A stretch of 40,646 nucleotides of DNA. Source: Intoshia linei (Eukaryota; Animalia; Orthonectida). A program made the translations under genes and the position numbers. A model generated the notes under the pieces. The model was not told the DNA's origin and did not search any database. It was given only the letters and a program-made list of their open reading frames with translations. The stretch covers positions 1 to 40,646 of the forward strand of contig LWCA01000199.1 in assembly GCA_001642005.1 (NCBI GenBank), written 5' to 3'. This document shows, piece after piece, positions 3,201 through 27,200 of the stretch; the stretch's first letter is position 1; each line of letters begins with the position of its first letter.

Positions 3201-6200
3201 AGTAAATTTCCAATAAAAATAGTGGAGTTGGTCAAATCCGTTACTAATCATTGTTCAATTTTCTCGTAATTACTTACAGTAGTTGTAGTTGGTGTCAGGC
3301 GACAACCTTTATCACAATTGGATACTTCATGAAACGTTCGTCCTACACCGATTATCCTCTGTTTGTACAAAGTATTCAACAATTAGTCATGTCATAAATC
3401 ACGTCATAGTTTGTACCGTGAAGTCTCCAATATTCGCCAATGTGGATATTTGCTCAAAAAAATTTTTTCCAAATGAAAATAAATCAAAAAAACTGAAACC
3501 CCATCATTTTTTTAAAATAAATGAAAATGAAATATTCCTAAAATTTTTGAATTGTCAATTTGGCGAACAGTCATAGTGTCAGTTAGTTTTAGTCATCTTT
3601 CAAATGATAAAAAATCTTAAATAAAAATTATCTAATAAGATTATATGACAAAAACTAATACTGGTAATTACGATTTTTATAAAGAGCCACTTGTCGCCAT
3701 TTTTTTGTCCATTCTTTGTCGTCTTTGATTAATTAAATCAGTATTATATTAAAAATTTTTAGAAACTATTTAAAAAACACGTGGCTAACTAATTGCATTC
3801 ATTTTATATCTACCAAAAGAAATGAAATAAATCATTTTGTATATAGTACAGAAAAGGTATGCTAATTAATTGATTAATTATGTTAATTTTAAAATGATTA
3901 ATTAAAATGTCCCAAAAATTTAGCTTGGAAAATTTAATAATATGACAAAATATTTTAATGTCATTGCAAAGTTGATGGAACTAGATTTGAGAAAATCCGT
4001 ATCTAACAATATTGAAAATCTTATTGATATTTTTTCACAATATCGAGATAAATCGAGCAATACTACGATCAACAACATTGAATTTTTGTATCTTGATATG
4101 GTATTTTTTAAAAATCAGTAAAAATCACTCAAATATTTTTTCATACATTTTATTTTAATTTATATTAATGCTAGACTGTATCGGAAGATTGTGAAATAAC
4201 ATATGAATACAATTCTGAAGAAATAATTACAATTTTTCAGGAAATTGTAAAATCTATATTAAATTCAACAAATGATTTACTCCGAATAGAACACGGTTTA
4301 TTTGTCAAATTACCGTATCAATCCAAAAAATTTATACGAAATTTGCAATATCATGAAGAATTTACTGTAAAATCTCTAAATATCATTGAGGAAATTGTTC
4401 TCATGTATGAACCTGATTTATTAAAGTAATATTTATAAATTTTTTAATTAAAGTAGCAGTGTACTAAAGAAATCGGTGTAATATAGAAAGGATAAACATC
4501 GTAAATACTTGGAATACACTTAATTTTTATAAGAAAATTTTTTATACCTTGAACCGATTAAAAAAATTCACTTTTCCAAAAAAATTCTGGTCGTGTATAG
4601 AATTTTCGAACCGGTAACGGGAACTGGGGAATTGTAGATAATGCTGTATTACTATTATTATAATAGTCAACGTTTTAGTTTCAATACCAATAATTACATA
4701 CATTTTGAGTATTTATTAAGTCCGGAAAGAATATTGGAATATGAATTATTTATCATGGATTCTCACAATGTTGACGAATATCGTAAAGTACTTGAAGATT
4801 TTTTGGATTACAGAACAACTATTCTATCATTGCCTTATAATTATTCATTAAAATTTTACAAGATTAATACCGAAAATTTACATAAGGTTAATAAAAATTT
4901 TTTATATAATTTGTTGTCGTATACCAAATCTAATTATACATTGATACATTTAGCGTCTAATAGAACGAATAGATTATTTAATGGATCTATACGCAAATAA
5001 TATCCTGTTATTATCCACAAATTTAAATAAAAGTATAAGTGCCAAGTATGACGAAATTGTTAATACACTATCTCAAACAACCCAAGAGATTGGTGAGATT
5101 GTTGATATGCAATTATACCAAGATACTTTGAATAAATTTGAATTAAACAATTTGGAGGAAAAAATAGAATTTTCAACACATTATTTATATTTTATATTGG
5201 AATATAAATTACTTTCTCGTGAAGACTTTGCACTAAACGACATTACCTTTTCGTGGAATAAGAGGATTCGACTTATTTTAAGTGCAAGGTACTATTAACT
5301 TTGGAAATTAAATTTTGTTAATAAAAAATTAAGAGAAGAAAGTTTAAAAAATGAAAAAAACAACGCCATTAATATTTTGGAACATAACATAAAAGTTTTA
5401 ATGACGGACTTTGAAAGTATTCATGAAAAAATTACCAACTTTAGAAATAAAGACCGTTTGGCTGATGCAAACTCAAATGTGGCAGAGTTGAATAAAATTT
5501 CGGATAAAATTGAGTTTTTAATTATTAAGGTAAATAATTTATATCATTAATTTTATAAAAATTAAAAAGTATGCATAATTGATAATTTAATGTAGAAAAA
5601 TAAATTCAACGAAGAAGAAGAATTATTGAATTTACCAAATCCGTCCAATTTTGACATTGTAAATTCAATATATTTCACAAAAGAACCATATGATAAATTA
5701 TGGGAAATTGGTGCAAATATACAAAAAAAACATAATGAATGGTTGGATGGGTGTATTCTTAATTTGGATGCAACAGAAATTGAAAATAGTGTAAGAATAT
5801 AAAATACCAAGTTTATACCAAATTTATAAATATTGAATTAGGTTCAATCAATGTGGCGTTCAATGTACAGACTGGTAAAGCAATTTTCGCATCCGTCCTT
5901 TAAAGGTCCCATGAAAGTAGCAAAGTCGATTAAATTAAAATTGGAAAAATTCCGAACTCACATGCCTTTAATTAATGTCATTTGTAGTCCAGGTTTAAAG
6001 CAACGACATTGGAATGAAATGGGATTGATTGTTGTTGTATTTTAATTGAATTGACTTTATAAATAGATTGGAAAAAGTATTGAACCAAATCAAGATACAA
6101 AATTGAATCAAATATTAAATAAAAATTTGGATTCATATGTTAATTTGTTATCTCCAATTTCTCAAAGAGCAGCCAAGGAATTTGGTGTTGAAAGTGTAAT

Positions 6201-9200
6201 TATTAATTTTTATGCATTTTTGTGATAGTTTTTACATTTTCTTTCAGATTCTAAATACAATGATCTCTGAATGGGAAAATATGGAATTGACTTTTATTAA
6301 TTATAAACAAAAGGATATTTACATTTTGGGAGATTTAGACAATATTCAATCAATATTAGATGATCATATCGTGAAATGTAAAACTTTAAAAAATTCTACT
6401 TTTTCGTCGCATATTGCTCAAGAAATTGTAGATTGGAGTAATCAGTTGGTAAATTTTTCATTATAACTACAAGTGTGTATTTCAGTGTTCATATCGAAAC
6501 ATCATATAATTCTACGAATAACAGGGTTGTAGCCTACATAAATACTATGACTAAATAGTCATACAACTTCTAGGGCAGTTTATTTATTCAGGGTTATAGT
6601 TTACGTGTCAATATCTTAAATTGACATCTTCACTTTCAAAAATTTATATTACAATTTTGACTACAAATTCACTTTGTATATTTTAAAATGGAACTTTGCC
6701 ATTTCAAGATATTGAAAGTAAAATTTTGTTTACCCCACTTTAACTTAAGAATTAATAAAAATAAGGATCGTAGAATCTTGAAAATAACTCAAATAATAAG
6801 TTGAAAGTCACTTTTTCCTGTACAAGTTTTAGGTTAGGTCTCAAAGTCTAAAAGTGACACCTTCACATTAAAAAATTTATATTGTGATTTTAACTACAAA
6901 TTTACTTTGTATATTTTGAAATGGAACTTTGTTATTTCAACAATGTTGAAAACAATATTTTTTTATCTCCCTATACAGCGAAAAATCAGGTTCGTAGAGT
7001 CTTGAAAATAACACATTGTTAGAACAGTTTTGTCCTGTGCAAGTTTTAGGTTAGGTGTCAAAGTCTAAAAGTGACACCTTCCCAATAAAAATTAATATTG
7101 CGATTTTAACTACACATTTACTTTGTATATTTTGAAATGGAACTTTGTTATTTCAACAATGTTCAAATTTTTTTGTTTGTTTAGATTAAACGTTAAAGTT
7201 TTACGGAGAAACTAAGAAACGCAGATACTTGGAAATACCACATTGTTAAGATAGTTTTTTCTTGGGCAGGTGATAGGTTAAGTTTAAATGTCTGAGATGG
7301 ACACGTTCATTGTAAAAAAAGCAAATTACAATATCAACAACGTTTACTTTCAATATTTTAAATTGATAATATTCAATTTTGAAATTAAAAATGTTTTTTA
7401 GAAAAACATAACCAGCGTTTCTTAAATGGGGCTTACAGTATGGGGCTGTATATAAAATATTACCCTATTACCATATTATCTTTAGACCAAAGTACAACAA
7501 GTTTTGGATATTTGGAGACATACGCAAATATCGTGGATATATTTTCAAGAAGTTTTTAATTATTCAAATATTTCTAACGAATTATCCGAACAACAGGAAT
7601 GTTTTGGAGAAATAAATGAAAAATGGTATAATTTTATATAAATAAAATGTAGAATTTAATCTACATTTTAGTTAGATTATAATTATAAGGTACATCCAGC
7701 TACGAGCATGTAGTTAAAATTAGCTTTAAATTTAAAATTTAAATTTTGATAGGAATTCAATTGTACAGAAAATGCTTGATAATAGCAAAGCTTTAATAAT
7801 TTTTAAAAATCCAGAAGTTTACGAAACACTAAACTTGGCTCTCGTAATTTTATATCCAAAAAACTAATAATAATTAATTTAGAATGTTATCGAAAAAATA
7901 AAAAGTGTTTTAGTCCAATATTTATCTGGTAAAATGAAAATTTTTCCGAGGTATACATTACATTATTTCTTGTGATAACATTTCATAACAATTTTTTTTT
8001 AAATTTAAAATTTCTGTAAAATTCGTGTCATGTTGAATCAATGCACTAATTAGTAATTAAATGACACTGCATTCAATTCAGTGCATTGTTACAATTTACG
8101 AATCGAACCTAATAAAAACTTACTGTTGATAACAATCGGGAATATCAGTCTCTACAGGGCTGAATCGTTTATAAATGTCATCTAAATGGGATTTTAGATT
8201 TTATTTTTTATCGGAAGATGAATTATTGGATATTTTAAGTGAATCAAAAAATTTAAAACGAATAGAAACAAATTTGAAAAAAATATATTCTGGATTTAAA
8301 AAACTAAAGATAAATGCATCAGATCCTTATCAAATTGATGGAATTATTTCAGACTATGGAGAAATTGTTATATTTATGAAGCCCATCAATATAGAAAAAT
8401 TTGATTTTCATGTAGAAAAATGGATTGTTGCTGTAATTTTATTTTTATTTCATAAATACACTGTACTCTATGTTTAGTTGGATAATATGATTATTTCTTC
8501 ATTGAAAAATCATCTTACACAATTAACTAATCAAGAATGGGACTATAAACAATTTATCAAAGTTGACAATATTAAAAAATTTCCATCACAAATTAATATT
8601 TTATGGTCTCAAACTATTTTTTGTTCTCAAATTGAAGAGGTAAGATAATTTTTTAATAACATATATTATATTTCTCTGCATACACTTTGAGCCATTGAAT
8701 ACTGATTATGTCATCTGGAGGAATGTGTTTAGTATCGGTTATCACTCTCTAAAAACTGTCTTGAAATTGAGTTTTTTTAATTTTAAGACTTTTAATTTTT
8801 TAATTAAACGGTATCACATTCACAGAAATTCAATTTTATTTAAGTAAAGGATAACTGAAAAGTGTTGAAAAAATTTAATTTAAAGCCGACTATTTTTTTA
8901 TTTCGTGTTTCGTGTGCATAGATTAAATTAAATTAAATCTAACATATGTTTTTTAATTTTAATGTATATATAGGCATATCAGAAACAAAGCGGTCTCAAC
9001 GAGTTGCTGGTAAAAGTGGAGACTACATTAAAAAACGCATTGGACATGAAACTAAATTTAAAAAAAGAGTACAAATTTGAAAATTTTAAATTGATGAGCA
9101 TTTGTTATCAAAACATATTAGTAGTACTGATGTATCAAAAAGATGTACTCAAACGATTACTAAAAAGTAAGATGGATAAAATACCATTCGAATGGATTTC

Positions 9201-12200
9201 TCAGATTCGATATTACATTGACGAATCAAGTAATAACTTGATAATAGAAAGCGTATACGGTAATTTAAACTATCAATATGAATATCTGGGTAATCAAGAT
9301 TCATTGATAATCACACCAATAACTGAAAAAGTGACAACATTTTTATTGTGTACATTTTCATTGATGAAAGGAGGAAATATATGGGGCCCTACTGCTACAG
9401 GGAAAAAGGCAATGGTAAAAGAATATTGTAAAAGGATTGGTAAAAACTACATTTGCCGAAATTGTTCAAATGGCGACCAAGAACTAACAAAGCTTTTTAA
9501 GGGAGTATTTCAAACTGGAGCATGTCTTCTTTTATCAGAATTAGATAGATTAAACCCAAAAACACAATTAATATTTATAGAACATTTAAAACATATTTGG
9601 AATGCATTTAGAACAAAAAATAGTGTAATTATTTTTAATGGTTTTGAAATTTGTGTAAATTTCGAATCTGTGATTTGTACAACTATTTGCACCAATTCGA
9701 TATCTCAAAATTCTATATCTGACGAAGTAATGTCAAGTTTTCGATCAGTTTCAATTATAAAACCAAATGTGGATATTATTGTAGCAAATAGTTTGTTTAT
9801 CCTTGGGATCAGTCAGTATCAATCACTCTCTGAAAAAATTGTCCATTTGTTTCAAATTTGTAAATACATGCTCAGTTCTCAATCTCACTACAATTTTGGA
9901 CTTGAAAATTTGAATATTGTGCTGAAATTTGTTAAATCTAAAATGAATGAAAATGTACTTTCCGAAACTGTAAATATTATTAAAATGGAGCAAGATATAG
10001 TTGAAAGTGCACTAAACCACATAATTTGGCCTACTCTATTACCCGATGATTCTACAAAATTTGCTAGAATTATTAAAAATTTTTTCGATTCAGACAAAGT
10101 CAAAAAAAATCCAACTATAGACTTGTTATTCAAAGAAATTATCAAAGAATTAAACTTTGGTTGGGAAGATGGCCAATGTACTAAAGTATTACAAATCCTG
10201 GAAATGATGAATTTCAAAAATTCGATATTACTAGTAGGTGAACCCATGTCAGGTAAAACTAGTTGTATTGAAATTTCTCGGGCTTTCATTAATAAATTGG
10301 ACAAATATCAAGCAATGACTTCATCAGAGGAAATTTTCAAAAAAATATTGATACATAAAATTTACCCATATTCTTTGACAAATACAGAAAACTATGGAAT
10401 ATACGATGCAAATCAAAGTGATTACAATGACGGAATAATATCATCAACTTTTCGTGAAATTTCAAAATCTCCAGATTCAAATTGGATCATTTTTGATGGA
10501 CCAATTGAAAATTCGTGGGTTGAAAATTTAACTACAACAATGACAAATAACCCTTACCTACTTTTCAAAAACGGAGAAACGATTCTGGTCAATAATACGA
10601 CAAATTTAATATTTGAAACGGCGCACATGTCGAATTGTTCACCAAATGTCATTAATCAGTGTGGGGTAATTTATTTTGACGCCACCAAAAATGTACATTG
10701 GAAATCAATCTTGTACTGCTGGAAGACAAATGTATTGAACAAAAATTTTGTAGGTTCCGTGTCTATTGCTGTAAAATTTTTTGTTAACCACCTCATTGAA
10801 CCCACAATAACGTATCTAAAATCTCACGTACCAAATGATATTATTGAAGGAGTTTCATTTAGTATAAAAATTGATAATTTTTGCAAAATGTTTTCAATCT
10901 TTCTCAAAAAAATTAAATGCCTCAATGAATCTGAAAATGAAAACGACAATGAAAACTCGGAAATGGAACCAGATGAAATGTTTGCATCGGCTTCAGAAAA
11001 ATCACTAATGTTGGAACAAATTAGTATGGCTATAGCTCAATGTCAGTTTTCTATAGTATGGTGTCTAGCTTCATTAATTCCCCAAAAATATGTCAATCCT
11101 TTTAGCACCTTTTTTATTAATCTCATTACTAATACTCTAAAAGAATATAACGAATCTGAAACCAAATACAAAGTACAAAAATCAGCTTTGTACCCTAAAC
11201 GGGGCACAGTGTTTGATTTTTACTATAAATTTACAACATTTGGCGCATGGGATCATTGGAGTAATTTGGTAAATTCAAAGCCTAGACGTGAAACCCTGAT
11301 AAATTTACAAAACTATATTGCAAATACGATAGAAAGCGAAAAACAATTATACTTTTTAAAGCTTTACAGTCAAGCTAGAATTCCTCTCATTATTTTTGGA
11401 CCTCCAGATAGTGGCAAAACTTTAATTGCCAGTACATATTTAAGTGAACGAAGGAGTATGTATTTAAAATTGAACGCATTCAAGACTGTAAGTTCAATTC
11501 GAAATACAATTCTTAATCGAATGCAGAGTTATCACAAAAATTTTCAAAATACTACTGATACTTTTCATATTGCAGTAGATGACATTAATAATGACGTCTT
11601 ACCTGAATCAGTAGACTTTTTACGCAATTTAATTGACAATGGAACTGTTTTAAACAGAAATAAATATGAACGTATCTTAGATCAAAATGTTACTCTTTTT
11701 GGTATGATGACGTCTCAATCATGCTCAAAAAAACCTTTATCCGTTAGGTTTTTAAGGTTATTTAATATTCTCACCATTCAAGAACTGTCACAACAAGTTA
11801 TATTCAATATTTTGCAAGACATTTTTAGTCATCATTTTAATAAAAAAAAATTTGATGTTACTTTAAAACATTTTACTCGCGTAATTTTTTTCTTCAATAG
11901 ATATTTCATTCATTTTCATTTTAGATATATATTACCGGTTTATTAAAGCTATATTCTTTGTCCAATGGAATTTTCAAACCTTCCGCCACCAATCCTCATT
12001 ATGGTTACAAAATCAAAGATTTAAAATTTGCTTTACAGGTACAGATATAGTCATATCTTATTATCATTATATCCTAACTTATACAATATGATACACGATT
12101 TTTGTTTGTGTGTGTGTCCTACTTTATTAAAATAAGTATTAGTCTTAGAATTTTATAAAGTCCACATTTCCATTACAGTTTTTTCCGGGGTGATAATAAG

Positions 12201-15200
12201 ATAAATTTCAACCTCCCAAACTGACATCTTACGGGTCAAAAACCCCAATTGTCCTTCGTTTTGAAAATCAAACGAGTTGGAGAATATACAAAAATATATA
12301 CGCTGATACGAATTTTAAAATCATAATCATTATCATAAATTTAAATTAAAAAAAAATTATATCTTTAGGGCCAAAACCCCAAATTCCCCTTCTTTTTTTT
12401 TGAAAGCAGCCCTAGAATTTCAAAAAAATTACAGGTGATACAGTTGTATCCTGTTAACACACACATAAAATTTCAATACGAATAAGTGACGACTTCACGG
12501 TCAAAAAAGCATTTTAGTATTCATATATACCAATTACATTACCAACTAACTTTTCAAGTAGCAAAGATAAAATTAATAGATTTTAATTTAATGTTAGAAT
12601 ATATATCCCTATTTCCTTTAATTTAGAATATTATTATATCTTCAACTTCCATCCTATTAACAGGGCCTTGGAGATCCAGCATTAGGCACTATAAAAAAAT
12701 TTTAAAAATGGGACCTCTATACATTGCTTAATCGATCGTTCATTATCTATAAATTAAAAATAACCGTTGGAAATCGCATTGGTTATCGAAATTTTGGTAA
12801 CTTAAGAAATTTCCAACATTAACTTTTAATAAAAAATTAATATTAAAATTAAAACCTATTAATAATAATAAAAAAGTAGACCTTTCATGATTTTAGACCG
12901 GCCATATGGCCATACCCCTCTCCACGGCCCTTCCCTTTAATACTTTTCTTTGTCTAAAGTTAAATTTACATTAGCGTTTCCCAAATGCCGGTCCACGAAA
13001 TAATTTTTACTAATTAAAAGTCAACTTATATGTTGTATTACGTTTTATATCAAAAATTTTTTAATCTAGCCTAGTACTTTCGCTTTAATATTCCCCGATA
13101 AATTTAATAATTTATTACCGGTTCTCCGTAAAAAAAATTTGGCAACCTTTGCTTTACATCTGTACCATGTTGAGAACATGTGTCATAAACCTTGTTAAAC
13201 ATGACAGTATTTAAAATGCCTCCAAAAAAAATTACTAGAAAAAGTGACCAGTGTGCACCTGGAAAAGTAATATTGCCATTTTTAAATATTTAATCTATAG
13301 GGCTTTTTAATGCTTGATCCAAAAATTTTGATAGAATTGGATACAAAGGATACAAATGCAAAACTATACAAATTTTGGTTACATGAAATGGTAAACACAT
13401 TTGATGATCAATTAGTATGTAATGAAGATCATGAAAAGTTTTATGAAATACTAAAGGTATTATAGCTTGTCATACTTTTTGATTTATTTTAATTAAAAAT
13501 TAAAGACGGTTTATGAAGAATCATTTAAATCGAGATTGAGCAGTTTATTTGGAAGTTCGTTATTTAGTTTAAAAAAAACGGACGTCAATGTGTATAGAAA
13601 ATTAATTGGCCAAATAACTTTTATCTCATTATCTCCAGAAATTCCATATAATGAAATAGACGATATATCAGAAATAAAAGAGGTAAGTGTATATAAATTC
13701 ATCAAGTTTCCAATCACTTTCAGTCTCTTTGTTACTTCTGCTATGTTTACAATAAGTTTATTATATTGTTGATAACCCGTGATTTTATATTAATTGGTTC
13801 ACGTATATCGTAACAATGTAGTATTTTATAACAGTACACTTTCATTTTAAAAAAGGGATGCTTAGGAAAAGGGGTTAGAAATGTTAGAAAACATTAATTT
13901 AGATAAACTGTGAATAAAATGATCGAGATCCCATTAATAATCCGTCAAAGACGAAATAATTGCATTTATGTACATTTCATTTTTAATAATAAAAGTAGAA
14001 ACTGACAAATAGTATCAATGATTACAATAATGATTACCCGACAAAAATTGATGTCGTTTTATTTGACAAATCTATTAAAAATATTATTAAAATTTACAAA
14101 ATCTTGTCTAACGGAGGAGGACATGCATTATTAATTGGTAACGTTTTATAAATATTAAATATGTAAATAAAAATAAAAATTTATATAGGGCCCAGTGATT
14201 CTGAACGCAAATCATCAGTATTTTTGGCATCATACATGTTGGGTTATAAAATTTTTGTTCCACAAGTTTCGAGATATTACGACAACGAGAATTGGAACGC
14301 TGATTTACGAAAATTAATGCGTTATTGTGGTATTGGTAATCAACCAGCATCATTTGTTATCAGTGACACGCATATTAAGGTACGCTATTTTAACATTTAA
14401 AAAAGTATTAAAATTAAACTTTAATTTTTTAGTACTTTTATTTTTTAAGTGATATCAATTCACTATGTCACAAGGGTTTTGTAGCAGACATTTACAGTAA
14501 GCAAGATTTATGTGAAATTCAAGAAAATGTATTTTTTACCAAATTTTTAGTATATTCATTGTAGATGTACCCTATATTGAATGAAATGCAGAATCTCAAT
14601 CCAAATGTTGAAATTACGGATGTGGCTGCATTGGAGTTGTTTTACAAAACAATTTTGAAAAATGTGCACGTGGTTTTAAGTTTAAACAATTTAAACACAA
14701 AATACAACGAATGGTTACATTACACACCTATTTGTTTGAGAAAATGTGTCATTACTTGGTTTGAGGTATCAATATAAAGTTAAAATTAGTTAATTCTTTT
14801 TATATAACATAGCCAATGAACACTGATGCATATTCTGGTATAACGGAAAATATATTTAGTAATATAGAAATGTCTGATGAAGATAGAAACAAGTGCCATA
14901 CTATGATTAATTATTTTTATGATACGAGTATGATGATATCTAAAAAGTACATTTATAGCATATTTTAACTCTTGAATTGAATAGATTGAATAAAGAAAAT
15001 GGAACTCCAATATATATAACTCCAAGTTCTTATGTGGATTGTCTAAATACTTTTAAAAAATTCATTGATATTGATCGTATGAAGTTATTTGTAAGAATAG
15101 AGCTTTATAGAAAGGGCACGGAGACACTTAATACCTCAGAGAAAGCAGTAAGATTAATGCACAATTAAATATAGATATGTCACTTTCATCAGGCTTTTTG

Positions 15201-18200
15201 GTGAATTTATAGTTGTTTAAAGTTGGTAAATAATATTTTATTCCCCCAAATGTTCCTGGAAAAGTGCACTGAAAATCTTTACAAATAAACATTACAATTG
15301 TAGATTGTAATCATGAAGAATGATATCAAAAAACGACAACCTGAGCTCCAACGAATGTCTGATGAAACTATACATTTGATTAAAGAAATTGAAGAAGAGA
15401 ATGTACAAATAGAAGCAATCAAACATAATTTAGAAAATGAAAAGCTTTTATCTAACCAAATTGCTGAAGAAGCTCAACAAATTCGAGTATGATGAATTAT
15501 ATTAGATTTCACAACAAATTTAGAATGAATGTGAATATGAACTATCTTTGGCTATTCCCGCTATGCAAACATCGATAACGTCTCTAAATAAGTTAAAGCA
15601 AAGTGACATTTCTATGTAATGAATTATTATTAATAATTTTTTAATATTAATAAAAAATTTTAATAATGTTACATTTTTAATTTCTGATAGACTAAAGGCC
15701 ATGCAAAATCCTCCTCAAGGAGTAAAATTAGTTATGGAAGCTATTTGCTTGTTGAAAGTTAATTTTATTTCACAATTATTGATTTTATTTTTATTTTAAT
15801 AGGGATTAAAACCAACAAAAAAAATTATTGATGGTAAGAATGTGGATGATTTTTGGGGGTGTGCAAAAAAAGTAAAATTACACTGTTTTATGTCTAATGT
15901 ATATTTATCTATAGATGATGGGAGATTTAAGATTTTTAGAATCATTAAAGGAATTTGATAAGAATAATTTGTCAAATAATGTAATGAAAATTATAAATGA
16001 TAGATATGTTCAAAATCCTTATTTTGTTCCAGAAAAAATAAAAATCATTTCTTCTGCATGTGAAGGTCTTTGTAAATGGGTTATTGCTTTGAACGATTAT
16101 CATAATGCTATGAAAGTAATTGTTTGGTTTATCAATATCAAATGGGTTTCAATTTTTTTAAAGAATCATTGAAAAAATTTTTAATGCACACGAAATTTGT
16201 AGGGTAAAATTAGGGGACTTTTTAGTTTAAAGGTTAAGAGTCATATTAAACAGGTCATGATATAAAGTAAATGTATGTTTTCATTAATTCGTTATAAATT
16301 ACAGATTGTCATACCGAAACAAAAAAGTTTAAAAGAAGCAGAAAAGGTTTATGAACAGCAAGCTCAACAATTTAACCAAAAAACTAAAGAACTTGAAACA
16401 ATTGAAATGAAATTACAAAATCAAAATAAATTTTTAAAAAATAAAATTGCTGAAGAAAAGGTTATTTTATATTTTAACAAATAAGCAGTGGCGGCTCGTC
16501 ATTCCAGGGATGCAGCCTTCCAGAATTTTGAAAAATACATAACAAATTATTCACAAAATTATAATTTTATAATACATACATATTGTAGTACATACTGTAT
16601 AAGTACTACTATTTTAGTACTATTATAATAATTATTAATAAGTATTATTAATTAACTACAGAGTTACATAGCTTTGTTAGTGTAATGCTGTTTCTATATC
16701 GATCTCAATTATCGTTGAATTGGTAGGTATAAAATTTTTCACGACACCCCTTTAAGTTTGGTTCAAAAAAACAATCTTAATAACCCCTCTTGAAATTTTG
16801 CTTCAAAAAAAATCTTAAAAACCCTTCTTGAAAGTTTGGTTCAAAAAAAAATCTAAAAACCCCTCTTGAAAGTTTGATTAAAAAAATTTCCTAAAAACCC
16901 ACATTAAAAGTTTGGTTTAAATAAAAATCTAAAAAACCCCCCTTGAAAGTTTGGTTCAAAAAAAAATCGGAAAAAACCTTCCTGAAAGTTTGGTTCAAAA
17001 AAAAAGTCTTAAAAATCCTTTTAAAATTTGGTTTTAAAAAAATTTTAAGAAACGCACCTTAAAATTTGGTTTACAAATTTACGAAACACAAGTTGAAAGT
17101 TTGGTTCAAAAAAAATATCTTAAAAACCCCTGTTAAAAGTTTGATTCAAAAAAAACCTTAAAAACCCCTGTTGAAAGTTTGATTTAAAAAATTTCCTAAA
17201 AACCCACATTAAAAGTTTCGTTTAAATAAAAATCTAAAAAACCCCCCTTGAAAGTTTGGTTCAAATAAAATCTGAAAAAACCCCCCTGAAAGTTTGGTTC
17301 AAAAAAAAATCTTAAAAACCCCTTTAAAGTTAAGTTTAAAAAAATTCTAAGAAACGCACCTTAAAATTTAGTTTACAAATTTACGAAACACAAGTTGAAA
17401 GTTTTACACATTTTACGACTAACCCATAGATTCTATGCAACATATATATCATTAATGTTTGATATTATTAATGATAATATTTTATTATTAAACATTATTA
17501 ATTATCCATTAATACAATTATATAATAGAATTTATCCAAAGATATTGACATGTGCAATAAAAAAATTACAAGAGCTTTAAATTTAATTGCAGGGTTGTTA
17601 GAAGAAAGAGATCGATGGAATCAGGTTAATTATCAAATTTACAATTTACATATTTGTAGTTATACTTGGAGTTGGTAGAAATGATATTGTCTAAAATAGT
17701 TGTTAAATTTTATTTTTCATAATAGAGTTTGTAGAATTTTATTGATCATAAAAAATTTTCGAAAAGTGGATTGTGTCAAAAAGTGTTAGTAAATTTAGAT
17801 TTATAGTAAAATGATGATAAACTTAGATTTTGTTTAAATGATTTGGTAAATTTGGTATATGTCCAAAAGTGATTGTAAAATGCAATTTTTTTTAAAATTT
17901 TTTATAGATTAAATTGTGTTCAAAAGGGTTGATTAAAGTGAATTTGGCTAAACAGTACTGATACATTTGTATTTTTTATAAAAGTATTGGTAAAATTGAA
18001 TTTGTCAGAAAAAAATTTTATTAGAATAGATTGCGCCCTAAGGGTTGGTAAAAGTGGATTTTGCCCAAAAATTTTGTTAAATTTATATTTTTCATTACAT
18101 GGTTGAAAACAATGAATTTATGATAAAAAAAGTTTATTAAAGTAGATGTACCAAAAATGGTTGATAAATTGAGATTTCTCATAAAAGGTTAAATAAAAGT

Positions 18201-21200
18201 GGAATTTTCATTGTTAAATTAAAACATCAAGTCAAGAGTCTTAGAGAGGTCGTTAGAGCTATATGACTAATGCATACATTTGTAGTTTGTGAAAAAATAT
18301 TTTAGGGACCTATTTTTTATTTTCAGTTACTTATAGCTGGGTAGATTTGGCTCGGCCCTTCCACCACCCGGAAAATTAAAAATAGTCACCTTAAAAATTC
18401 ACTCAAACGATGCGTAATGACATATACCAGCCATCTCTCTACGGGTTGTAATTGACGGTTTTTATATTGAAAAATATACTAAATTTTCAATACTCAATTT
18501 GGAAAAATGCTGACCTGAAAAAAGTCTCGTAAACGACTAGTAGTAATGATTTATAAATCCAAAATTTTTAAAACACAAAATTTTATAGTTGGTTAAAGAT
18601 TTTGCTATAAATTCCCTAAATGATGCTGAAAAATTACCAAAATTTTTAAAGTTAGTAAGATTTCTGTCGTTTCAATATTTATTTTCAAATTAAAAAATAA
18701 TTTATGAAATATTTGACTCAGTGTTTAAAAAAGATGACAATCCTTAATTATAGAGATTGATTAATTTATAATTTTACAAATCCATCTTTAATAAATATGT
18801 AGGAATTGATAAAATTACAAGATCGATTTGATAATATTCTCAGCGATTTATTATTATCATCAGCTATAATAACATACATGTCATCATTCAGTGACACCAA
18901 GAGAAGAGTAATTATTCTTAAAATTATATATATATATATATAAATCAGTGATTCTCGTTGTTCGGTGTCTTACCTCAATTTGTGGTCAAGCGGCAAATTG
19001 AGTTTTTCAAAAATCAATCAATATCTCGCTCAAGCTGTAGTTGGTTTAATTTTATTCGTGTGTAACGCAGCGAACGTACTTTTGATATATGTTAAGATTG
19101 GAACACGGCACCTGAAAATGGTCCTGAACTACTGACTTAAATTGATAAATTTAATAAATTTAATAAAATTTGCAATTAGGAGTGTACGAAGGATTGGGTT
19201 ATTAAAATGAATAAAATAAATTTCAATTTATCTGTCGGATTTTCAATAAAAAGTGTTTTTTCAGAGCCAACTACTATTAAAAATTGGATAATGTGTGGAT
19301 TACCTAATGATGAGTAAGTTTATTAAATTTTTTTTACTTTTGTAATTTTTATAGGTTTTCAATTGAAAATGCAATTATATGTTATAAATCATTGCATTAT
19401 CCTTTTATAATCGACCCACTGGGTCAAGCAAATGATTGGCTGAAATGTAATGAAAAGAATAATAAAATTTTGGTTCTTAACATGAATATGGAAGATTTTT
19501 TACCACGTTTAGAAGATTGCATGCAGGTATAAACTTTATAAACTTGTCATAAATATTGCCCAAATTTATAATTTTTGTTAAATAAATTGTATGACTGAAT
19601 GATTTAGATGGGACAACCCTGTTTATTGGAAAATATATCTGAATATTTTGGTTCAACAATGGATTCCATTTTATCTCCAACAATAATAAAAACATCTCAT
19701 TCATTATTGTTTAAAGTTGGAAATAATGAATTTCCATTCAATCCAGATTTCAGACTGTTTATGACCACTTTAAATTGTGAACCTCAAATCGATAACTCAA
19801 CTCTTTCTAAAGTAATTTCATCAAATATCATTTTAATTTTACAAATCTGAAATTTTAACATAATTTAGATTAATGTTGTCAATTTTTTGCCTACAAAAGA
19901 GGGAATTATACAACAGTTGATGCGCGTCATTTCATTTTATGAACAACCTTCACTGGAACGAGAACATTCTCACTTAATTAATGTTGAAACTTTAAATCGA
20001 TTCAGATTACAGGAAGTAGAATCTAAAATACTTAAAGTTGTTTCAAATATTAAGGTAATAATGTATTTGAAAAAATAAGAAAAGGTGCCAAAACCGCTAT
20101 GAATATTATGTGTCAATTTCCAATATATTATGGGACCCTAATCGAAAACCACTGCCTTAGAGAGTTTTATTTTATTAAATTTGAAGGTTTTTCATATCTA
20201 AAGCATTGAAGATTAGAAACAAAAAATTGATACATATGTAGTGTAAAATTGACTACTATATAAAATATTTAGGGCGAAATACTAAATAACGAAGAAGCAA
20301 TAGAAATTTTATCTGAAAGTCAAAAACTTGCCACAGATTTAATTGAAAAGCAAGAAATTAACAAAAAATTGTTGATTAGTATAGAAGAGAACAGAAATTT
20401 ATATAGAATGGTTTAAATTGTAATTTTATTTAAAATTTAAAATAAATTTAGTTGTCCGTTGAAGCCAGTATTATATTTTATTCAATGTATCACATGCGGC
20501 TCAGTAATATTATGTATGAATTTTCCTTCAAAACATTTGTCAAGCTTTTTACTCAGGTACTACATATCTTAAGTTGAAATTTAACAACAATTATAATTTT
20601 CATATCTTATTCCATACGATATAATTTACAATTTAGTCATTGAAAGGATCCACCAAACACACCAAAATAGAAATTCGTATAAAAAAAATTTTTAACAAAT
20701 TAATGCAAAATATTGTATTATATGTTAATCATAGCTACTTTCAAAAAGACAGATTAAGATTACTATTGTTGATGGTTCTCAAATTGGAAAAATTTAGGTA
20801 TACTCATTGTATTATTAATAATGTAAAATGGCAAGAATGATCAATAAAATAATTTATTAACCAATATTTTTGAGATTATTTTCAAAAAAATATTGAATAA
20901 TTAAAATAACTAGAATTTAACAAAATTTATAATTCCAAGACAGTTTTCTTTCCATTTTTGACATGTGATATCGAGAAAAAATTTCAACCTCAGAAATTTT
21001 CCCCTGCCCGAATCAAAAACACATTTTAAATTAAAAATGTAATCTACGAATCTTAGATATCGTTGGCAGAGCGGAATCTATTTTACGCAATACCTGATTC
21101 CGGGACATTTTGATTCAAATGGGTGCCTCTCATTTTTCAAAATTAAGCAGTGCTCAATAAAAACTTTAAAAAAATTGTATTTTTGATAATCATAACTGTT

Positions 21201-24200
21201 TTGTGTGTCCAATTTAAACTGTAAGTCCAGTAAGATCCTGGAGAGATGGCTTGGATTACATGACATTACGTATCGTTTTAAAATATTTTAGGATATATTT
21301 TTGATTTTTAACGCCGGCGGCCTCAGTAGGTTCAGCTCTGATCGATAATACACTTTTTACGTAGAATTCAATTCAGCGACATACGTTTGAGTGATATTAT
21401 TTTGAGCGATGTATAGTTACAGCAATACATCTTAAAGCAGCGGTCGGCAACCAATGTTCACATAATAATTTTTGGTGGCCCTTTGAGTAAATATGTAAAA
21501 TTTACATTGTAAATTATTTATTTTTCAACTTTTAAACAGTTTTAAATATTTTCTATTATAATTGGCTCATTATAATCATTTTAATACTGAATTTTCAGAT
21601 CGTCCCGGATTTTATTTTGTTGAATATACTAGAAACTTTTCTCTTCAATTAAAATTGAAATCTATCATGTGTAAATTTTCAAAAACGGACCCACATATTT
21701 TTTTTATATAAAAAAGTGACGCACGAGATGCAAAAGGTTGCCGACCCCTGTCTTAGAGCGATATAATCATTGACTTTGTTAATTAATCATACTATTTATT
21801 TTTTGAAAATTGTGGTTTTTTTAATGACAATGACCAAAATGTAGGGTTTTTAAGGGATTTTTTTTCTACTATTTTTTTATTGACTTTGAAGATAATTTTG
21901 GGAACAAAGTTTTGTAGGGTTTTTAATAGTGTTTTTCACCCAATTTTTAAAGATTTTGAAGGTAATTTTGAGACCAAAAATTTGGTAGGTTTTTGAAGGA
22001 AATAGTATTTTTTACTCAATTTTTAAACATTTTAAAGGCAATTTTGGGGTTCAAATTTTGTATGGTTTAGAAGGGAATATTTAACATTTTATGGAATCTT
22101 CAAAATCTTTAAAAATTGGGTGAAAAAAATGTTCTATTAAAAACCCTACGAAATCTTATGACCAAAATCTTGAAAAATGGTAGAAAAAAATTCCCTTAAA
22201 ACCCCTACAAAATTTTCGTCTAAAATTATCAATACAAGATAATAAAAATAATAAATAAATATGAATAAAGAAACCCACTATAATTTTGTGAAAACATCAA
22301 TACATGTATGATAAATTAGTAAAATCGATGATTATGTCGCTCAAACGAATGTCACTCCAGAGAATGGACGTCGAATAATATATTTAAATTTTATAAATTG
22401 GCATATTCGCATTTTGAAAATTTCAAATCTTTAGTTCATCACGAGGTTTAGAAATTTTTTAAGAGTCCGTAAAAAAATTTTCTTGAAATGTGGTAAATAG
22501 GTCCGTAGATTTTTAGAATTTTAAATTTAGGAACCACCACTTTACTGCATTGTATTACATTTTATAGTAAAAATTAGTAATTTTACCTAATCAGTGATCA
22601 CACTTATGCATTCATTGTATTTAGAAAAATCATTAATCAAGACGATATTAATGCTTTGTTAAAACCCTATGACTATATTGTATATACAAAAACACAAAAA
22701 GTCTCTCAAGATGAAAAAAAAAATGAAATTTTGAATAATATTTCTGAAATTCCAAGATTAGAAAACGTCCCACTACATTACAACCAACACGTAATGTGAA
22801 TTACTTTATAATTACAATGTACATTCTAATATTACCGTTTTAGCAAGAGTTATTTGAAAATTTAATCAATAGTCAAAATCCTCTCCAATTTAAACATGAA
22901 GAATTCAATTATTCTATATTCGAAAAATTGTTAATTTTAAAATACTTCCATCCAGAAAAGGTATAAACATTTAATATTTTGTATTATTGTATTTTTTAAA
23001 TTTATTATTTTTAATATAAAATAAATTTAATGTAATGTTTTTAATATTAGCCATATTAATAATTTAAGAAGCGATTAACATTTAAATAATTTATTAACAT
23101 GTAAATATTTTATAAAAACGATAGTACTTATTATAATAATAATTTTAGTTGACTATGTATCTAAACCAATATGTGAATATAATTATTGGTAAAGAAAAGG
23201 GAAAATTCGTCCAATTCATAAATGTACTCAATAATATAATAAAATTATCCAAAAAAGATAAAGTTATAATAAAAGTGTTTTCATCCTTTTATATTGATGA
23301 TACAAACATAATAACTGGATTGGCAGAATCTAAAAGTAAGCAAATGTATTACTAGTATATTATAATATAACTATATATTTAAACTTAAGATATAAAATTG
23401 ACAAAATGTTTGATATACAGAAATACGAAAGAGGAAATACTTTCAATACTAACAAAAGGTATAATAAACGGAGAATGGTTATTGATTGAATCAGCACATT
23501 TATCAATATTACAAATGGAATGGATAGAATATTTTGTTATTAACGTAATTTTAATAATTATAATTTAAAAAAATTTAAATGATTTGCTTTAGATGCCAGT
23601 TAAAAAAAATAGTATTAATGAAAATTTCAGATTATTCATAACCACTAAAGAAACCAACAAATTCCCAGTGTTTTTGATTAAAAAAGCTATTAAATTCATT
23701 CATGAAAGTTCTCATAATTTTAAAACATATTTGGATGAATCGAAACAAGAAATTATGCAAAATATTAATAAAAATGTTTCTAGTTTGAATTATTTGGTAA
23801 ATTTACAATTTATTATTTTGGTAATTATTTACCAAATTAATAGTGTAATTAGACATTCTTAACACTTTGCATGGTGTTTTGAAGCTAAACTACATGAGTA
23901 GTAATTAGATTAATTCCACGTTGAGAATGTCTGATGTGCATGGAAATTTTTAAATAAAATTTAGAAAATTTTATTTTACATCACATACACCCATGCCTGT
24001 ATTCAAGGACGTGAGTTATTCAACACTGTTGGTTATAATGACAATTACAATTTCCACGATATCTATCTGGATGATTTTAAGCATCTCATGAATGTAATTT
24101 TCAATTTTCAATTGACCAATTATAAATTAAAAAATTTTAAAATTAAGATAATATCCGAGAGTTATTCAGACAATTACGAGTTGTTGGAAACTTATAGGTT

Positions 24201-27200
24201 TGAAACGGTCGAATATTTGGCTAAGGAAATTTATACAAAGCAATTAATAAATAGTCATGATGAAATAACGATATGTTCAATTCTGAAACAAATGTTGCTT
24301 GATCCAATGACTAAAGATGTACCAAATAAATACATGACGAAACTAAATTTCCCCGTTTGTGGTATGTATAATTTGGATAAAATTGAAAGATTCGATGAAT
24401 TTATTGAAAGTTTACCAGATTACAACAGCTCTACTGTATTTAATTTGATACAATTTAATAGTAATCATTTAAATTTCTAGTTGTATGGGCTCACTGAAAA
24501 TATATCCGCTCGTCAATCTTTGTCTGAAACAAGTGAATTACTGTATAGTGTTACGTCTCTTTTTGATCAAAAGGTTAGATGCTGTTTTAATATTATCATT
24601 TATTCTAATATAGAATTTATCCAAAAAAATTCGTGGAATTGACGTACACGTTTTGGAAACAATTTTGAAAGATTTTTCATCCCATCAAATTGAGTTAATC
24701 CAAGACGAAGTAATAAATAATTTACGTGTTAATAATAATTATAATTATTTTAGAGTTTGTTAAAAATGAAGAAAAATATTAATAGTCCCATAATAGAATT
24801 CCTTAATGATGAAATCAAAATGCATAATATTATTTTCAAAAAAATTTACACTGACACCCTCCTTATTTATGATAATATCAAAAACAATATAATAACTGAC
24901 GATCAAAACATTCAGATTGTCTCAGACTGTCTTGTAGATAATAAGGTATTATTATATTCTTCATCTTGAAAATGAAACTAAATCAGTTTCTCAACCCTTG
25001 ATAGATGTAATGTTTTTTAAATTTGATAACAGACTAGATTGACTGTTATGTACTTTGTACAAACAGAACCTAGCTCTGCCTAGGGCGGACTTTTTTAATC
25101 GTAACAAAAAATAAATTAAATAAGAAAGCTTAAAAATGCTATTTTTTACTATTATCAATCCTTTAAAGTAGTGATTCCCAAACTTGTTTCACAATAGACC
25201 AGTCATTTAACATTTATGATTTTAAAATTCGTATCAGCGTATATATTTTTTTAAATTCTCCAACTCGTTTGATTTTCAAAAAGAGGAACAATTAGGGTTT
25301 TTGACCGGTAAGATTTGAGTTTGGGAGGTTGAAATGTATCTTATAATACGTCCCGGAAAAAACTGTAATTCAAATGTGGACTTTATAAAATTCTAAGACA
25401 GGTAGTTATTTAAATAAAGCGTAACACAGACACACACAAACAAAAATCGCGTAGCATATTATATAAGTTAGGATACTAATCAAAGTAGTTTAAAGAATCC
25501 TGTAACTGTTTTCATTCAAAAATAAGATATTTTGTGGTTTTGACGGTGAAGATGCTAATTTCTCAATTTGAAATGTATCTTACGTTCTGAATCAGATAAA
25601 TGAGACTTAGAATGTTTGTTATATCAATAAATGGTTACAGACCGACAGACACACATTTTTAGCAACTTTAACTTGCCTATATTTAATAGGTAAGGTAAAG
25701 GATATTATAAATTCAATTTTTTTTATAAGTATACATTCATTTCCAATTTCTCACAAGGTCGTATCAAATTGTGAAAAAGTCATAACTTTTCCTTTGTATT
25801 AGTTCACTCCAATATTCAAAACAATTTATTTAAAATTTTCCAGTGTTTATGTCTACCTCATTAGACGGTATGACCCTGATTAAAAAATTTATCAATTTTA
25901 AATAAAATTTTACATTACAATTCATAAAATGTGAATAAAAATTAAAAAATAGATTCCACCATCTTGGTATGTCATAAAGAACATATGCTCATCTCATACC
26001 TGTGCTTCTTTCTTAGATTATAAAAAACAACAATTGCAGTATACTCAGGTAAAAATTAAAATTAACATGAAAAAATTAAAAATTATCTTTAAATTTAGAA
26101 ATTGTTTGAAAACCGTCAGCACAATGCTACCTACTGGATAGGTGCATTTTTCTACCCATCTCGCTTTTTGATATCAATTTTACAATTTAATTCTATTCGT
26201 CGACGTGTTCCGATTAGCAATCTTATCAACACGTTTAAAATAGCTACTACTAAACTCAAAAAAGCACGATCTAATTTATCAATCCTTGTGGTAATTACCT
26301 TTTTTTATTACTGGCTTGTCTGTTTCGTGTTTAGTTGAATTGGAATAAAAGTAGATGCTTAAATCAGTGGTTCCTGATTGGAAGTCCTTGGACCCTTTCT
26401 CATCAAAAACTATTTTCCTGGGGTCCGTGAGATTTAAATAAAATATAAAAAAATTTTATCAACTTTTGTTAATTTTTATAGGAGACTTTAATATTTATTA
26501 CAGATTTTCCAAATGTTGGGAATTTATCCCAAAGCCTGGACGACCGGTACATTATTATTTAAAAAATTCCATTTTAAAACCTCAGGGAAAAATCGACTTT
26601 TACCGATATTTTATTGAAAAATCCCCTTTTTCAAATATTTTTTTGAAAAACACGATTTCATCAAATCTTATCACAAAAACCTCTTATTCGAACCTCAAAA
26701 TAAAAATCCAATTTTAGAAATGCATAAGGTAAATATCCTCTTTTTCCAATATTTTTTTGAAAAAACTATTTTACCAAATCTTATGAGAAATAACTTCCTA
26801 ATCCAAAATCCAATATTACCCACCCTTAATGAAAAAATCCCCTTTTTCCCATATATTTTTGAAAAAAATGATTTTACCAAATCTTAAGAAAAAACCTTTT
26901 TTTCATTATTGTTTTATATTTCATGTTTCCGTTGGGATCCAAAAAAATAAATATTTTTAAATTAACTTTTTATTCAAAATTTAAATAACATTTGAATCGT
27001 GAACAACCGGCTTAAATTGATTTCATTAAATAATATAAATTTAGAATGAATCGTATCAAATGTATGGGTTGCACATTCACGGTGCTTTGTGGGACCCAAA
27101 AATGAAAAACCTTCAAGTTTTGCATGATAAATCAACATTTAGTGAATTTCCAAATGTAAATTTTTTGTATTTAAGACCAGTGCTGCCCACCTTTATCGTT

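What the first reader, a model, noticed from the sequence alone, without database searches (positions are those of the whole stretch)
9385..10659. Candidate 'pseudo-dynein': intact heavy chain with five catalytic elements of the AAA1 ATPase site substituted
Seen, compared with the recalled axonemal dynein consensus: Walker A is GPTATGKK (9385-9408; consensus GPAGTGKT, Mg-binding Thr->Lys). Walker B is CLLLSELDRL (9535; consensus CFDEFNRI, Asp->Ser, Glu retained). Sensor-I TMNPGYAGR is replaced by TICTNSISQ. Sensor-II is HYNFGLE (9904; consensus HYDxGxR, Arg->Glu). The AAA2 arginine finger is SPNVINQCG (10657; consensus SPATVSRCG, Arg->Gln). Established: AAA1 hydrolysis is essential for the dynein power stroke and for microtubule release. 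The ~58-exon frame nevertheless stays open through to the C-terminal domain. Inference: a selectively maintained, non-motile dynein acting as a static cross-link, brake, scaffold or mechanosensor in cilia. It appears to derive from the DNAH3/7/12 clade and may be independent of known degenerate chains such as DNHD1.
Basis: partly seen in the sequence, partly recalled or inferred. Interest (0 to 1): 0.9.

Follow-up and report, generated by a model that had tools for sequence, protein, structure and literature searches.

The report
Inner-arm dynein with dead motor site
The parasite Intoshia linei keeps an apparently intact gene for a ciliary inner-arm dynein whose main ATP-burning site is destroyed while its microtubule-gripping tip is preserved; this looks like a separately evolved example of the 'non-motile dyneins' first described in 2025, but I could get no expression data.

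Summary
The window is a contig start of the orthonectid Intoshia linei. It carries a multi-exon dynein heavy-chain gene on the + strand, resolved from 3936 to 27668. One 2.9-kb exon (8974-11880) encodes AAA1 to AAA3. Every other dynein locus checked in this genome is canonical, as are most of the best hits among 1.84 billion proteins.

The gene does not look like a dead pseudogene:
- About 40 colinear exon pieces join through GT-AG introns in frame.
- The big exon could tolerate only about 1-2% neutral change before acquiring a stop.
- Erosion is domain-specific: AAA1 keeps 0.42 of canonical conservation, the linker 0.79 and the stalk/MTBD 0.82.

Similarity and an AU test are consistent with a DNAH3/7/12 (IAD-3) origin, not the outer-arm origin of DNAHX. 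DNHD1 could not be tested directly. The idea is not new: DNAHX and DNHD1 are known, and I found similar dead-AAA1 DNAH7-like proteins in sand flies and other insects. Other scan notes report dead-AAA1 dynein genes, one read as DNAHX-type, on other DNA of this genome. Verdict: new variant of a known kind, moderate interest.

The parts
3936..27668 (+). Resolved span of the dynein heavy-chain gene (linker to C-terminal domain, with stop codon). Tail exons upstream of 3936 are not resolved.
   Evidence: 38 colinear matches to an IAD-3 profile, positions 411-4062 of 4065. GT-AG introns restore frame and profile continuity at about 20 junctions. The stop lies at 27666-27668.
8974..11880 (+). Single large exon encoding the end of the linker, AAA1, AAA2 and AAA3.
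   Evidence: Open frame. Pfam AAA_6 213 bits over the full model, AAA_7 65 bits, Dynein_AAA_lid. Acceptor AG at 8972-8973 and donor GT at 11881.
9385..9408 (+). AAA1 Walker A, GPTATGKK. The Mg-ligand Thr is replaced by Lys, and the fourth residue Gly by Ala.
9526..9549 (+). AAA1 Walker B, LLLSELDR. Asp is replaced by Ser (9535-9537); the Glu is kept.
9682..9708 (+). AAA1 sensor-I loop, TICTNSISQ in place of TMNPGYAGR. The Asn, Pro, Tyr and Arg are lost.
9886..9906 (+). AAA1 sensor II, HYNFGLE. Arg is replaced by Glu (9904-9906).
10237..10263 (+). AAA2 Walker A, GEPMSGKTS, retained.
10639..10665 (+). AAA2 arginine finger that points into AAA1, SPNVINQCG. Arg is replaced by Gln (10657-10659).
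11398..11421 (+). AAA3 Walker A, GPPDSGKT, retained. The Walker B VDDIN downstream is also retained.
14128..14215 (+). AAA4 P-loop region, which spans a 51-nt intron. It reads GPSDSERKS against GVGGSGRQS, so it is degenerate.
15686..16121 (+). Microtubule-binding domain on three exons (15686-15757, 15803-15871, 15915-16121). It reads in frame, has no insertion and keeps the hallmark helices.
   Evidence: The third exon is 51% identical to P0008, the IAD-3 dynein of the chytrid fungus Gonapodya.
19353..20051 (+). AAA5 exons, among the best conserved in the gene.
27450..27668 (+). Last exon of the C-terminal domain, with the stop codon.

Best explanation
The window carries a maintained, protein-coding paralogue of the single-headed inner-arm dyneins (IAD-3 group, the DNAH3/7/12 type) of Intoshia linei. 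It has lost the chemistry of its main motor site.

Shown:
- Both Mg2+ ligands of AAA1 are replaced (the Walker A Thr and the Walker B Asp).
- The sensor-I Asn/Arg loop, the sensor-II Arg (now Glu) and the AAA2 arginine finger (now Gln) are replaced.
- The AAA4 P-loop is also broken.
- The AAA2 and AAA3 P-loops, the linker, AAA5 and a complete insertion-free stalk/MTBD are kept.

Inferred: the protein cannot run the ATP-driven cycle of power stroke and microtubule release. Without a working gamma-phosphate pocket it would sit in an apo- or ADP-like state, which in dyneins binds microtubules strongly. It most likely docks by its tail in one of the inner-arm positions of the ciliary repeat. There it would act as a passive microtubule-binding arm, either as a structural placeholder or as a sliding-resisting link. 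A canonical IAD-3 paralogue on contig C658 would supply the motor activity.
For: Identity of the gene:
- Pfam AAA_6, AAA_7 and the AAA lid match the big exon.
- The exons are colinear with an IAD-3 profile out to the C-terminal domain.
- The best solved relatives are DNAH3, DNAH7 and DNAH12, at 338, 303 and 301 bits, against 241 for DNAH6.

The loss is specific to this gene.

The gene looks intact:
- About 20 tested junctions have frame-keeping GT-AG introns.
- The chance of 980 open codons in DNA of this composition is 6e-39. Under neutral substitution the exon stays open with probability 0.12 at 1% change and 0.018 at 2%. Its protein branch, by contrast, is 2.4-7 changes per site against a median of 0.4.

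Selection is domain-specific. Identity relative to canonical IAD-3 proteins is 0.42 for AAA1, 0.79 for the linker and 0.82 for the stalk/MTBD. The heterogeneity gives chi2 59, p 2e-9.

Origin:
- Exon-by-exon best hits are IAD-3: summed bits 892 for P0008 against 448 for DNAH6 and 346 for the best outer-arm protein.
- Holding the query with IAD-3 gives a higher likelihood than the free search; AU p 0.64.

Precedents:
- DNAHX is a purified non-motile heavy chain with a degenerate AAA1.
- Sand-fly DNAH7-like proteins keep a shared degenerate Walker B across four genera.
Against: - No transcript, protein or orthologue evidence was obtainable.
- The free ML trees do not recover the IAD-3 placement. 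They attach the very long branch to other long branches.
- About 28% of the profile columns were not matched by any exon piece, so frame breaks in weakly conserved exons are not excluded. The tail exons are unresolved.
- The nucleotide state, the microtubule affinity and a ciliary location are all inferred.
- The whole protein is strongly diverged (21-39% identity to the consensus in every domain), which could also reflect broad relaxation of constraint.
Confidence: 0.6

Rival explanations
1. The gene is drifting towards loss. Constraint relaxed after a duplication or after the simplification of the parasite's cilia. The protein is made but is dispensable, or barely functional, and simply has not yet been hit by a stop or frameshift.
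For: It has the longest branch of all dyneins in the genome. Two ATP sites are degenerate. No orthologue was found anywhere. Orthonectid genomes are strongly reduced (my own knowledge).
Against: The open frame tolerates only about 1-2% neutral change, yet the catalytic site has been completely rewritten. About 20 splice junctions are intact. The linker and MTBD keep about 80% of canonical conservation while AAA1 keeps 42%. Uniform decay would not produce that pattern.
Confidence: 0.2
2. It is still a working motor. Either AAA1 uses unusual chemistry, for example the new Walker A Lys standing in for Mg2+ with the retained Walker B Glu, or AAA3 drives a modified cycle.
For: The Walker A Lys and the Walker B Glu of AAA1 are retained, and so are the AAA2 and AAA3 P-loops. 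The linker is well conserved.
Against: Five separate catalytic elements are lost, including a charge reversal at sensor II and the loss of the arginine finger. AAA1 hydrolysis is the step that drives the dynein cycle (established knowledge; restated). AAA3 of canonical IAD-3 proteins already has DD, not DE, in Walker B.
Confidence: 0.07
3. It is this animal's member of an already described inactive clade (DNAHX or DNHD1), not an independent loss.
For: The phenotype is the same: a degenerate AAA1 in an otherwise complete heavy chain. Long-branch effects make the trees unreliable.
Against: Against DNAHX:
- DNAHX derives from the outer-arm alpha chain, is about 5,270 aa long with many insertions, and has an insertion that disrupts its MTBD. 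This gene is colinear with a 4,065-column IAD-3 profile, has an uninterrupted MTBD and scores lowest against outer-arm proteins.
- Scan notes place a DNAHX-type gene on another piece of this genome (I did not check this).

Against DNHD1:
- None of the roughly 30 proteins I named among the 150 best hits is a DNHD1.
Confidence: 0.1

Closest known systems
Canonical single-headed inner-arm dyneins of the IAD-3 group (human DNAH3, DNAH7, DNAH12; PDB 8j07, 9fqr)
   Same: Best sequence matches over the whole AAA1-AAA3 exon. Same domain order and length. Most exons, including the MTBD, hit this group best. The AU test allows a common clade.
   Different: All five AAA1 catalytic elements and the AAA4 P-loop are substituted. 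Identity to the group consensus in AAA1 is 29% against 68-70% for normal members, including the I. linei paralogue P0056 = OAF70501.1.
DNAHX, the non-motile dynein heavy chain of sea-urchin sperm (Chai et al., bioRxiv 10.1101/2025.01.18.633724)
   Same: A complete heavy chain whose AAA1 Walker A Thr, sensor I and sensor II are changed, and which is inferred or shown to be non-motile.
   Different: DNAHX comes from the outer-arm alpha chain, is about 5,270 aa long with insertions, keeps its Walker B, is locked ATP-bound in the pre-powerstroke state, and has an insertion that disrupts its MTBD. This gene is IAD-3-like, of normal length, has lost the Walker B Asp and both arginines, and keeps a canonical MTBD. 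Those features predict the opposite, strong-binding state (inference).
DNHD1, the 'orphan' dynein heavy chain needed for sperm and nodal cilia
   Same: A poorly conserved AAA1 that lacks catalytic Walker B residues, and a suspected non-motile role.
   Different: DNHD1 is described as an orphan lineage with disordered insertions. This gene still scores as IAD-3. No DNHD1 sequence was available for a direct test.
Insect 'DNAH7/DNAH12-like' proteins with a degenerate AAA1, found here: sand flies (XP_059609452.1 and relatives), the wasp Microplitis, the bee Ptiloglossa, the damselfly Ischnura, the beetle Asbolus and the gall midge Contarinia
   Same: IAD-3-type heavy chains with substituted Walker A/B and sensor I. 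Their AAA1 is eroded to 40-45% identity with the consensus while the stalk/MTBD stays at 36-45%. In sand flies the degenerate Walker B CFK[DN]FN[SN]V is shared by four genera.
   Different: They are only 22-25% identical to the I. linei protein, no closer than canonical dyneins are, so common descent is not shown. Most keep sensor II Arg and the arginine finger. I found no paper that describes them.

Membership tests
Dynein heavy chain | Linker (DHC_N2), six AAA modules, stalk/MTBD and C-terminal domain, in order | tested here: met
   Pfam AAA_6, AAA_7 and the AAA lid match the big exon. The exons are colinear with profile positions 411-4062, covering the regions that Pfam calls DHC_N2, AAA_8, MT, AAA_9, AAA_lid_11 and Dynein_C in P0008; only 30 of the 114 Dynein_heavy (AAA6) columns were matched.
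Catalytically competent dynein motor (AAA1 ATPase) | Walker A GKT, Walker B DE, sensor-I Asn, sensor-II Arg and the AAA2 arginine finger | tested here: not met
   The five elements read GKK, SE, C (within TICTNSISQ), E and Q respectively.
IAD-3 subfamily (DNAH3/7/12) | Groups with DNAH3/7/12-type proteins rather than with other dynein classes | tested here: inconclusive
   Top PDB hits are DNAH3, DNAH7 and DNAH12. Exon-wise summed bits are 892 against at most 448 for other classes. The constrained clade is not rejected: p-AU 0.64, and its log-likelihood is 5.9 higher. The free trees, however, place the long branch with other long branches.
DNAHX | Derived from the outer-arm alpha heavy chain | tested here: not met
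   Outer-arm representatives are among the weakest matches: 330-346 summed bits against 892 for IAD-3. No DNAHX sequence itself was in the comparison.
DNAHX | Over 5,000 residues with multiple insertions, including one that disrupts the stalk/MTBD | tested here: not met
   Profile positions run on without large inserts across the exons. The MTBD reads uninterrupted over three exons. The unresolved stretches could still hide inserts.
DNHD1 | Membership of the orphan DNHD1 lineage | not testable with these tools
   No DNHD1 sequence could be fetched. Indirect evidence only: none of the named proteins among the 150 best hits is a DNHD1.
Expressed gene (not a pseudogene) | Spliced transcript with the observed residues | not testable with these tools

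The most novel reading that the evidence does not exclude
This would be an independently evolved 'rigor' pseudo-dynein. An IAD-3 inner-arm heavy chain lost nucleotide turnover at AAA1 and AAA4 but kept a canonical MTBD. It would then occupy an inner-arm site as a permanently strong-binding link between doublets, the mechanical opposite of DNAHX, which binds weakly in the pre-powerstroke state. It would also be one instance of a recurrent route by which IAD-3 paralogues turn into passive axonemal elements, as seen in sand flies and other insects too.
Probability: 0.3. Interest if true: 0.7.

Novelty: new variant of a known kind. Interest (0 to 1): 0.5.

Why it matters
Dynein motility depends on AAA1, so complete heavy chains with a dead AAA1 are natural experiments on what else a dynein can do. 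Only DNAHX and DNHD1 have been discussed so far. DNAHX's microtubule-binding domain is disrupted; DNHD1's was not examined here. If this gene is expressed, it would add a third case, probably independent in origin, from the inner-arm family, and with the opposite design: a dead motor and an intact microtubule grip. Together with the insect cases found here, it would suggest that turning inner-arm motors into passive axonemal parts is a repeated evolutionary route. That idea could be tested by cryo-electron tomography and by recombinant motor domains. The case currently rests on one genome of a fast-evolving parasite, without expression data.

Tried and rejected
- Orthologue and dN/dS. HMMER against 1.84 billion representatives found nothing above about 31% identity, so no sister sequence exists for a rate test.
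- Free ML trees (LG+G4 with 85 rows; C20 mixture with 57 rows). They placed the query with other long branches: P0132, then the DNAH14-like I. linei gene. P0132 proved to be a trichomonad dynein, 52% identical to a Tritrichomonas protein. I reject that join as long-branch attraction.
- Common descent with the insect dead-AAA1 proteins. Pairwise identity is 22-25%, no higher than to canonical dyneins, so this is not supported. The shared Walker A Gly-to-Ala ('ATGK') is too weak a character to count.
- ESM Atlas look-ups returned only generic dynein clusters.
- Literature. I found no paper on I. linei dyneins or on dead-AAA1 insect DNAH7-like proteins.
- Joined protein. Only two short local joins were made inside scripts, to check frames.
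- Structure prediction and complex prediction were not run. A model built on canonical homologues would return the canonical fold and could not tell the nucleotide state.
Full report
WHAT IS THERE

The window is AT-rich (about 27% G+C). It is the first 40.6 kb of contig C241 of a 41.6-Mb assembly. A paralogous locus of that assembly is 100% identical to GenBank OAF70501.1 of Intoshia linei, so the organism is this orthonectid parasite.

One frame on the + strand is open for 980 codons by the ORF listing, from the first start codon at 9004 to 11943. It matches Pfam AAA_6 over the full model (213 bits), plus AAA_7 and the dynein AAA lid. Its best solved relatives are human DNAH3, DNAH7 and DNAH12, at 338, 303 and 301 bits; DNAH6 reaches 241.

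THE OBSERVATION

The HMMER alignment to human DNAH3 and the raw sequence confirm each substitution:
- Walker A: GPTATGKK at 9385-9408, against GPAGTGKT.
- Walker B: LLSELDR, with Ser at 9535-9537, against CFDEFNR.
- Sensor I: TICTNSISQ at 9682-9708, against TMNPGYAGR.
- Sensor II: HYNFGLE, with Glu at 9904-9906, against HYDYGMR.
- AAA2 arginine finger: SPNVINQCG, with Gln at 10657-10659, against SPATVSRCG.

This is specific to this gene:
- The other dynein loci of the same genome carry canonical motifs wherever the fetched stretch covers them. The exceptions are a DNAH14-like gene on C122 with mild variants and an AGK in place of AGR in sensor I at L011.
- In an alignment of the 150 best hits from 1.84 billion representatives, 135 read GPAGTGKTE. 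The query is the only row that fails all five tests.

I add one point. The AAA4 P-loop is also degenerate: GPSDSERKS against GVGGSGRQS. The AAA2 Walker A (GEPMSGKTS), the AAA3 Walker A (GPPDSGKT) and the AAA3 Walker B (VDDIN) are kept.

IS THE GENE INTACT?

I built a profile from 16 full-length relatives, mostly of the IAD-3 group. It matches 38 colinear + strand pieces, from profile position 411 (nt 3936) to 4062 of 4065 (nt 27659). The stop codon is at 27666-27668.

At about 20 junctions where profile positions run on, a GT-AG intron restores both the frame and the profile count. Most of these introns are 36-81 nt long; three are 1.0-1.2 kb. The large exon runs from an acceptor at 8972-8973 to a donor at 11881. 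A 69-nt mini-exon (15803-15871) completes the MTBD.

About 28% of profile columns found no exon piece, and the tail exons upstream of 3936 are unresolved. Intactness is therefore shown for most of the motor, not for all of the gene.

IS IT MAINTAINED?

No orthologue closer than about 31% identity exists in the library. The argument is therefore internal to the sequence, and it has two parts.

First, the open frame:
- The chance of 980 open codons in DNA of this composition is 6e-39.
- In a simulation of neutral substitutions, the exon stays open with probability 0.12 at 1% change and 0.018 at 2%.
- The protein's terminal branch is 2.4 changes per site under LG, or 7.2 under a mixture model. 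The median is 0.4-0.46, and most other I. linei dyneins lie between 0.15 and 1.0, with two long ones at up to 2.2.
- Almost all of this divergence, including the rewriting of the catalytic site, therefore happened while the frame was being held open.

Second, the erosion is uneven. The table gives identity to the IAD-3 consensus.

| Domain | Query | Canonical members | Ratio |
|---|---|---|---|
| AAA1 | 29% | 70% | 0.42 |
| Linker | 36% | 45% | 0.79 |
| Stalk/MTBD | 39% | 47% | 0.82 |

The canonical set includes the I. linei paralogue P0056 for the domains it covers. The heterogeneity across ten domains gives chi2 59.2, p 2e-9. The hallmark helices of the MTBD are present and no insertion interrupts them. 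This agrees with scan note s1-793195. Uniform decay would not leave this pattern.

ORIGIN

- Exon by exon, the best hits are IAD-3 proteins in most pieces. Summed bits outside the big exon are 892 for P0008 (Gonapodya, a chytrid fungus), 448 for a DNAH6 and 346 for the best outer-arm protein.
- Free ML trees attach the very long branch to other long branches. One such partner, P0132, is a trichomonad dynein, so that join is long-branch attraction.
- Holding the query with the IAD-3 clade gives a log-likelihood 5.9 higher than the free search, and the AU test does not reject it (p 0.64).
- I. linei also has a canonical IAD-3 gene on C658.

I read the gene as a diverged IAD-3 paralogue, with moderate confidence.

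COMPARISON WITH WHAT IS KNOWN

Non-motile heavy chains are already described.

- DNAHX, from sea-urchin sperm. Its AAA1 Walker A Thr, sensor I and sensor II are changed. It is locked ATP-bound in the pre-powerstroke state. It derives from the outer-arm alpha chain, is about 5,270 residues long with insertions, and has a disrupted MTBD.
- DNHD1 is discussed in the same paper as a possible structural analogue.

This gene differs from DNAHX in origin, in length and in the state of the MTBD. A direct test against DNHD1 was not possible, because no DNHD1 sequence could be fetched. None of the roughly 30 proteins I named among the top 150 hits is a DNHD1. Scan notes s1-784651 and s1-783163 report dead-AAA1 dynein genes, one read as DNAHX-type, on other pieces of this genome. 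I did not check those notes.

There is also an unexpected set of parallels:
- Several insect RefSeq proteins named DNAH7 or DNAH12-like have degenerate AAA1 motifs: Ischnura, Phlebotomus, Ptiloglossa, Microplitis, Asbolus and Contarinia.
- In sand flies the degenerate Walker B CFK[DN]FN[SN]V is shared by four genera, while 112 other insect DNAH7-type proteins retrieved in the same search are canonical.
- These proteins are no closer to the I. linei protein than canonical dyneins are, so I treat them as parallel cases.
- I found no paper on them.

MECHANISM

Shown: both Mg2+ ligands, the sensor-I loop, sensor II (with a charge reversal) and the arginine finger are gone. Normal hydrolysis at AAA1 is therefore excluded by established AAA+ and dynein enzymology.

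Inferred:
- The gamma-phosphate pocket has lost two arginines and gained a glutamate, so the site is probably empty or ADP-like. In dyneins that state goes with the straight linker and with tight microtubule binding.
- With a conserved MTBD and linker, the likeliest role is a passive microtubule-binding inner arm, acting either as a placeholder or as an element that resists sliding.

This mechanism is a hypothesis. I give about 0.6 to 'maintained non-catalytic IAD-3 dynein' and about 0.3 to the specific rigor-link role.

VERDICT

- Observation: confirmed.
- Interpretation: partly supported.
- Class: a new variant of a known kind, not a new category.
- Interest: moderate (0.5). It is limited by the lack of expression and orthologue data, by the 2025 DNAHX precedent and by the insect parallels.

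Noticed in passing
G000 contig C3117, about 9750-16350 (L014:1924-3408, 5054-6901, 7304-8353): A second dynein-like heavy chain in the same genome, and a much more degenerate one. Its AAA_6 match is only 26-36 bits and its AAA ring is about 21% identical to any dynein. Its stalk/MTBD ORF, however, is 36-39% identical to DNAH7-type proteins (Pfam MT, 112 bits). It may be one of the dead-AAA1 dynein genes reported in other scan notes.
   Followed up: partly
G000 contig C122, about 16541-17995 (L006): A DNAH14-like heavy chain that is also fast-evolving: 35% identity to its best representative, terminal branch 1.6-2.2. Its AAA1 motifs are mildly altered (GPTGTGKTE, ICLDEINR).
   Followed up: no
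Proteins P0062, P0285, P0286, P0287 (Phlebotomus argentipes, P. papatasi, Lutzomyia longipalpis, Sergentomyia): Sand-fly DNAH7/Dhc36C-like proteins share a degenerate AAA1 (Walker A GxTSxGKTE, Walker B CFK[DN]FN[SN]V, sensor I lost) at 76-81% mutual identity. The 112 other insect DNAH7-type proteins retrieved in the same search are canonical. This looks like a conserved dead-motor inner-arm dynein in Phlebotominae. I found no paper on it.
   Followed up: partly
Proteins P0132, P0169, P0170, P0252 (trichomonads): Parabasalid dynein heavy chains with a degenerate AAA1: Walker B C[LF]QE[IL]QR, sensor I lost, and sensor-II Arg lost in P0132 and P0252. They are a source of long-branch attraction in dynein trees.
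   Followed up: no
window 12050-13300, 16461-17528, 17625-18802, 20823-22843, 24436-26098: Long introns (1-2 kb) in a gene whose other introns are mostly 36-81 nt. I did not examine their content; they could hold unmatched exons, nested genes or repeats.
   Followed up: no
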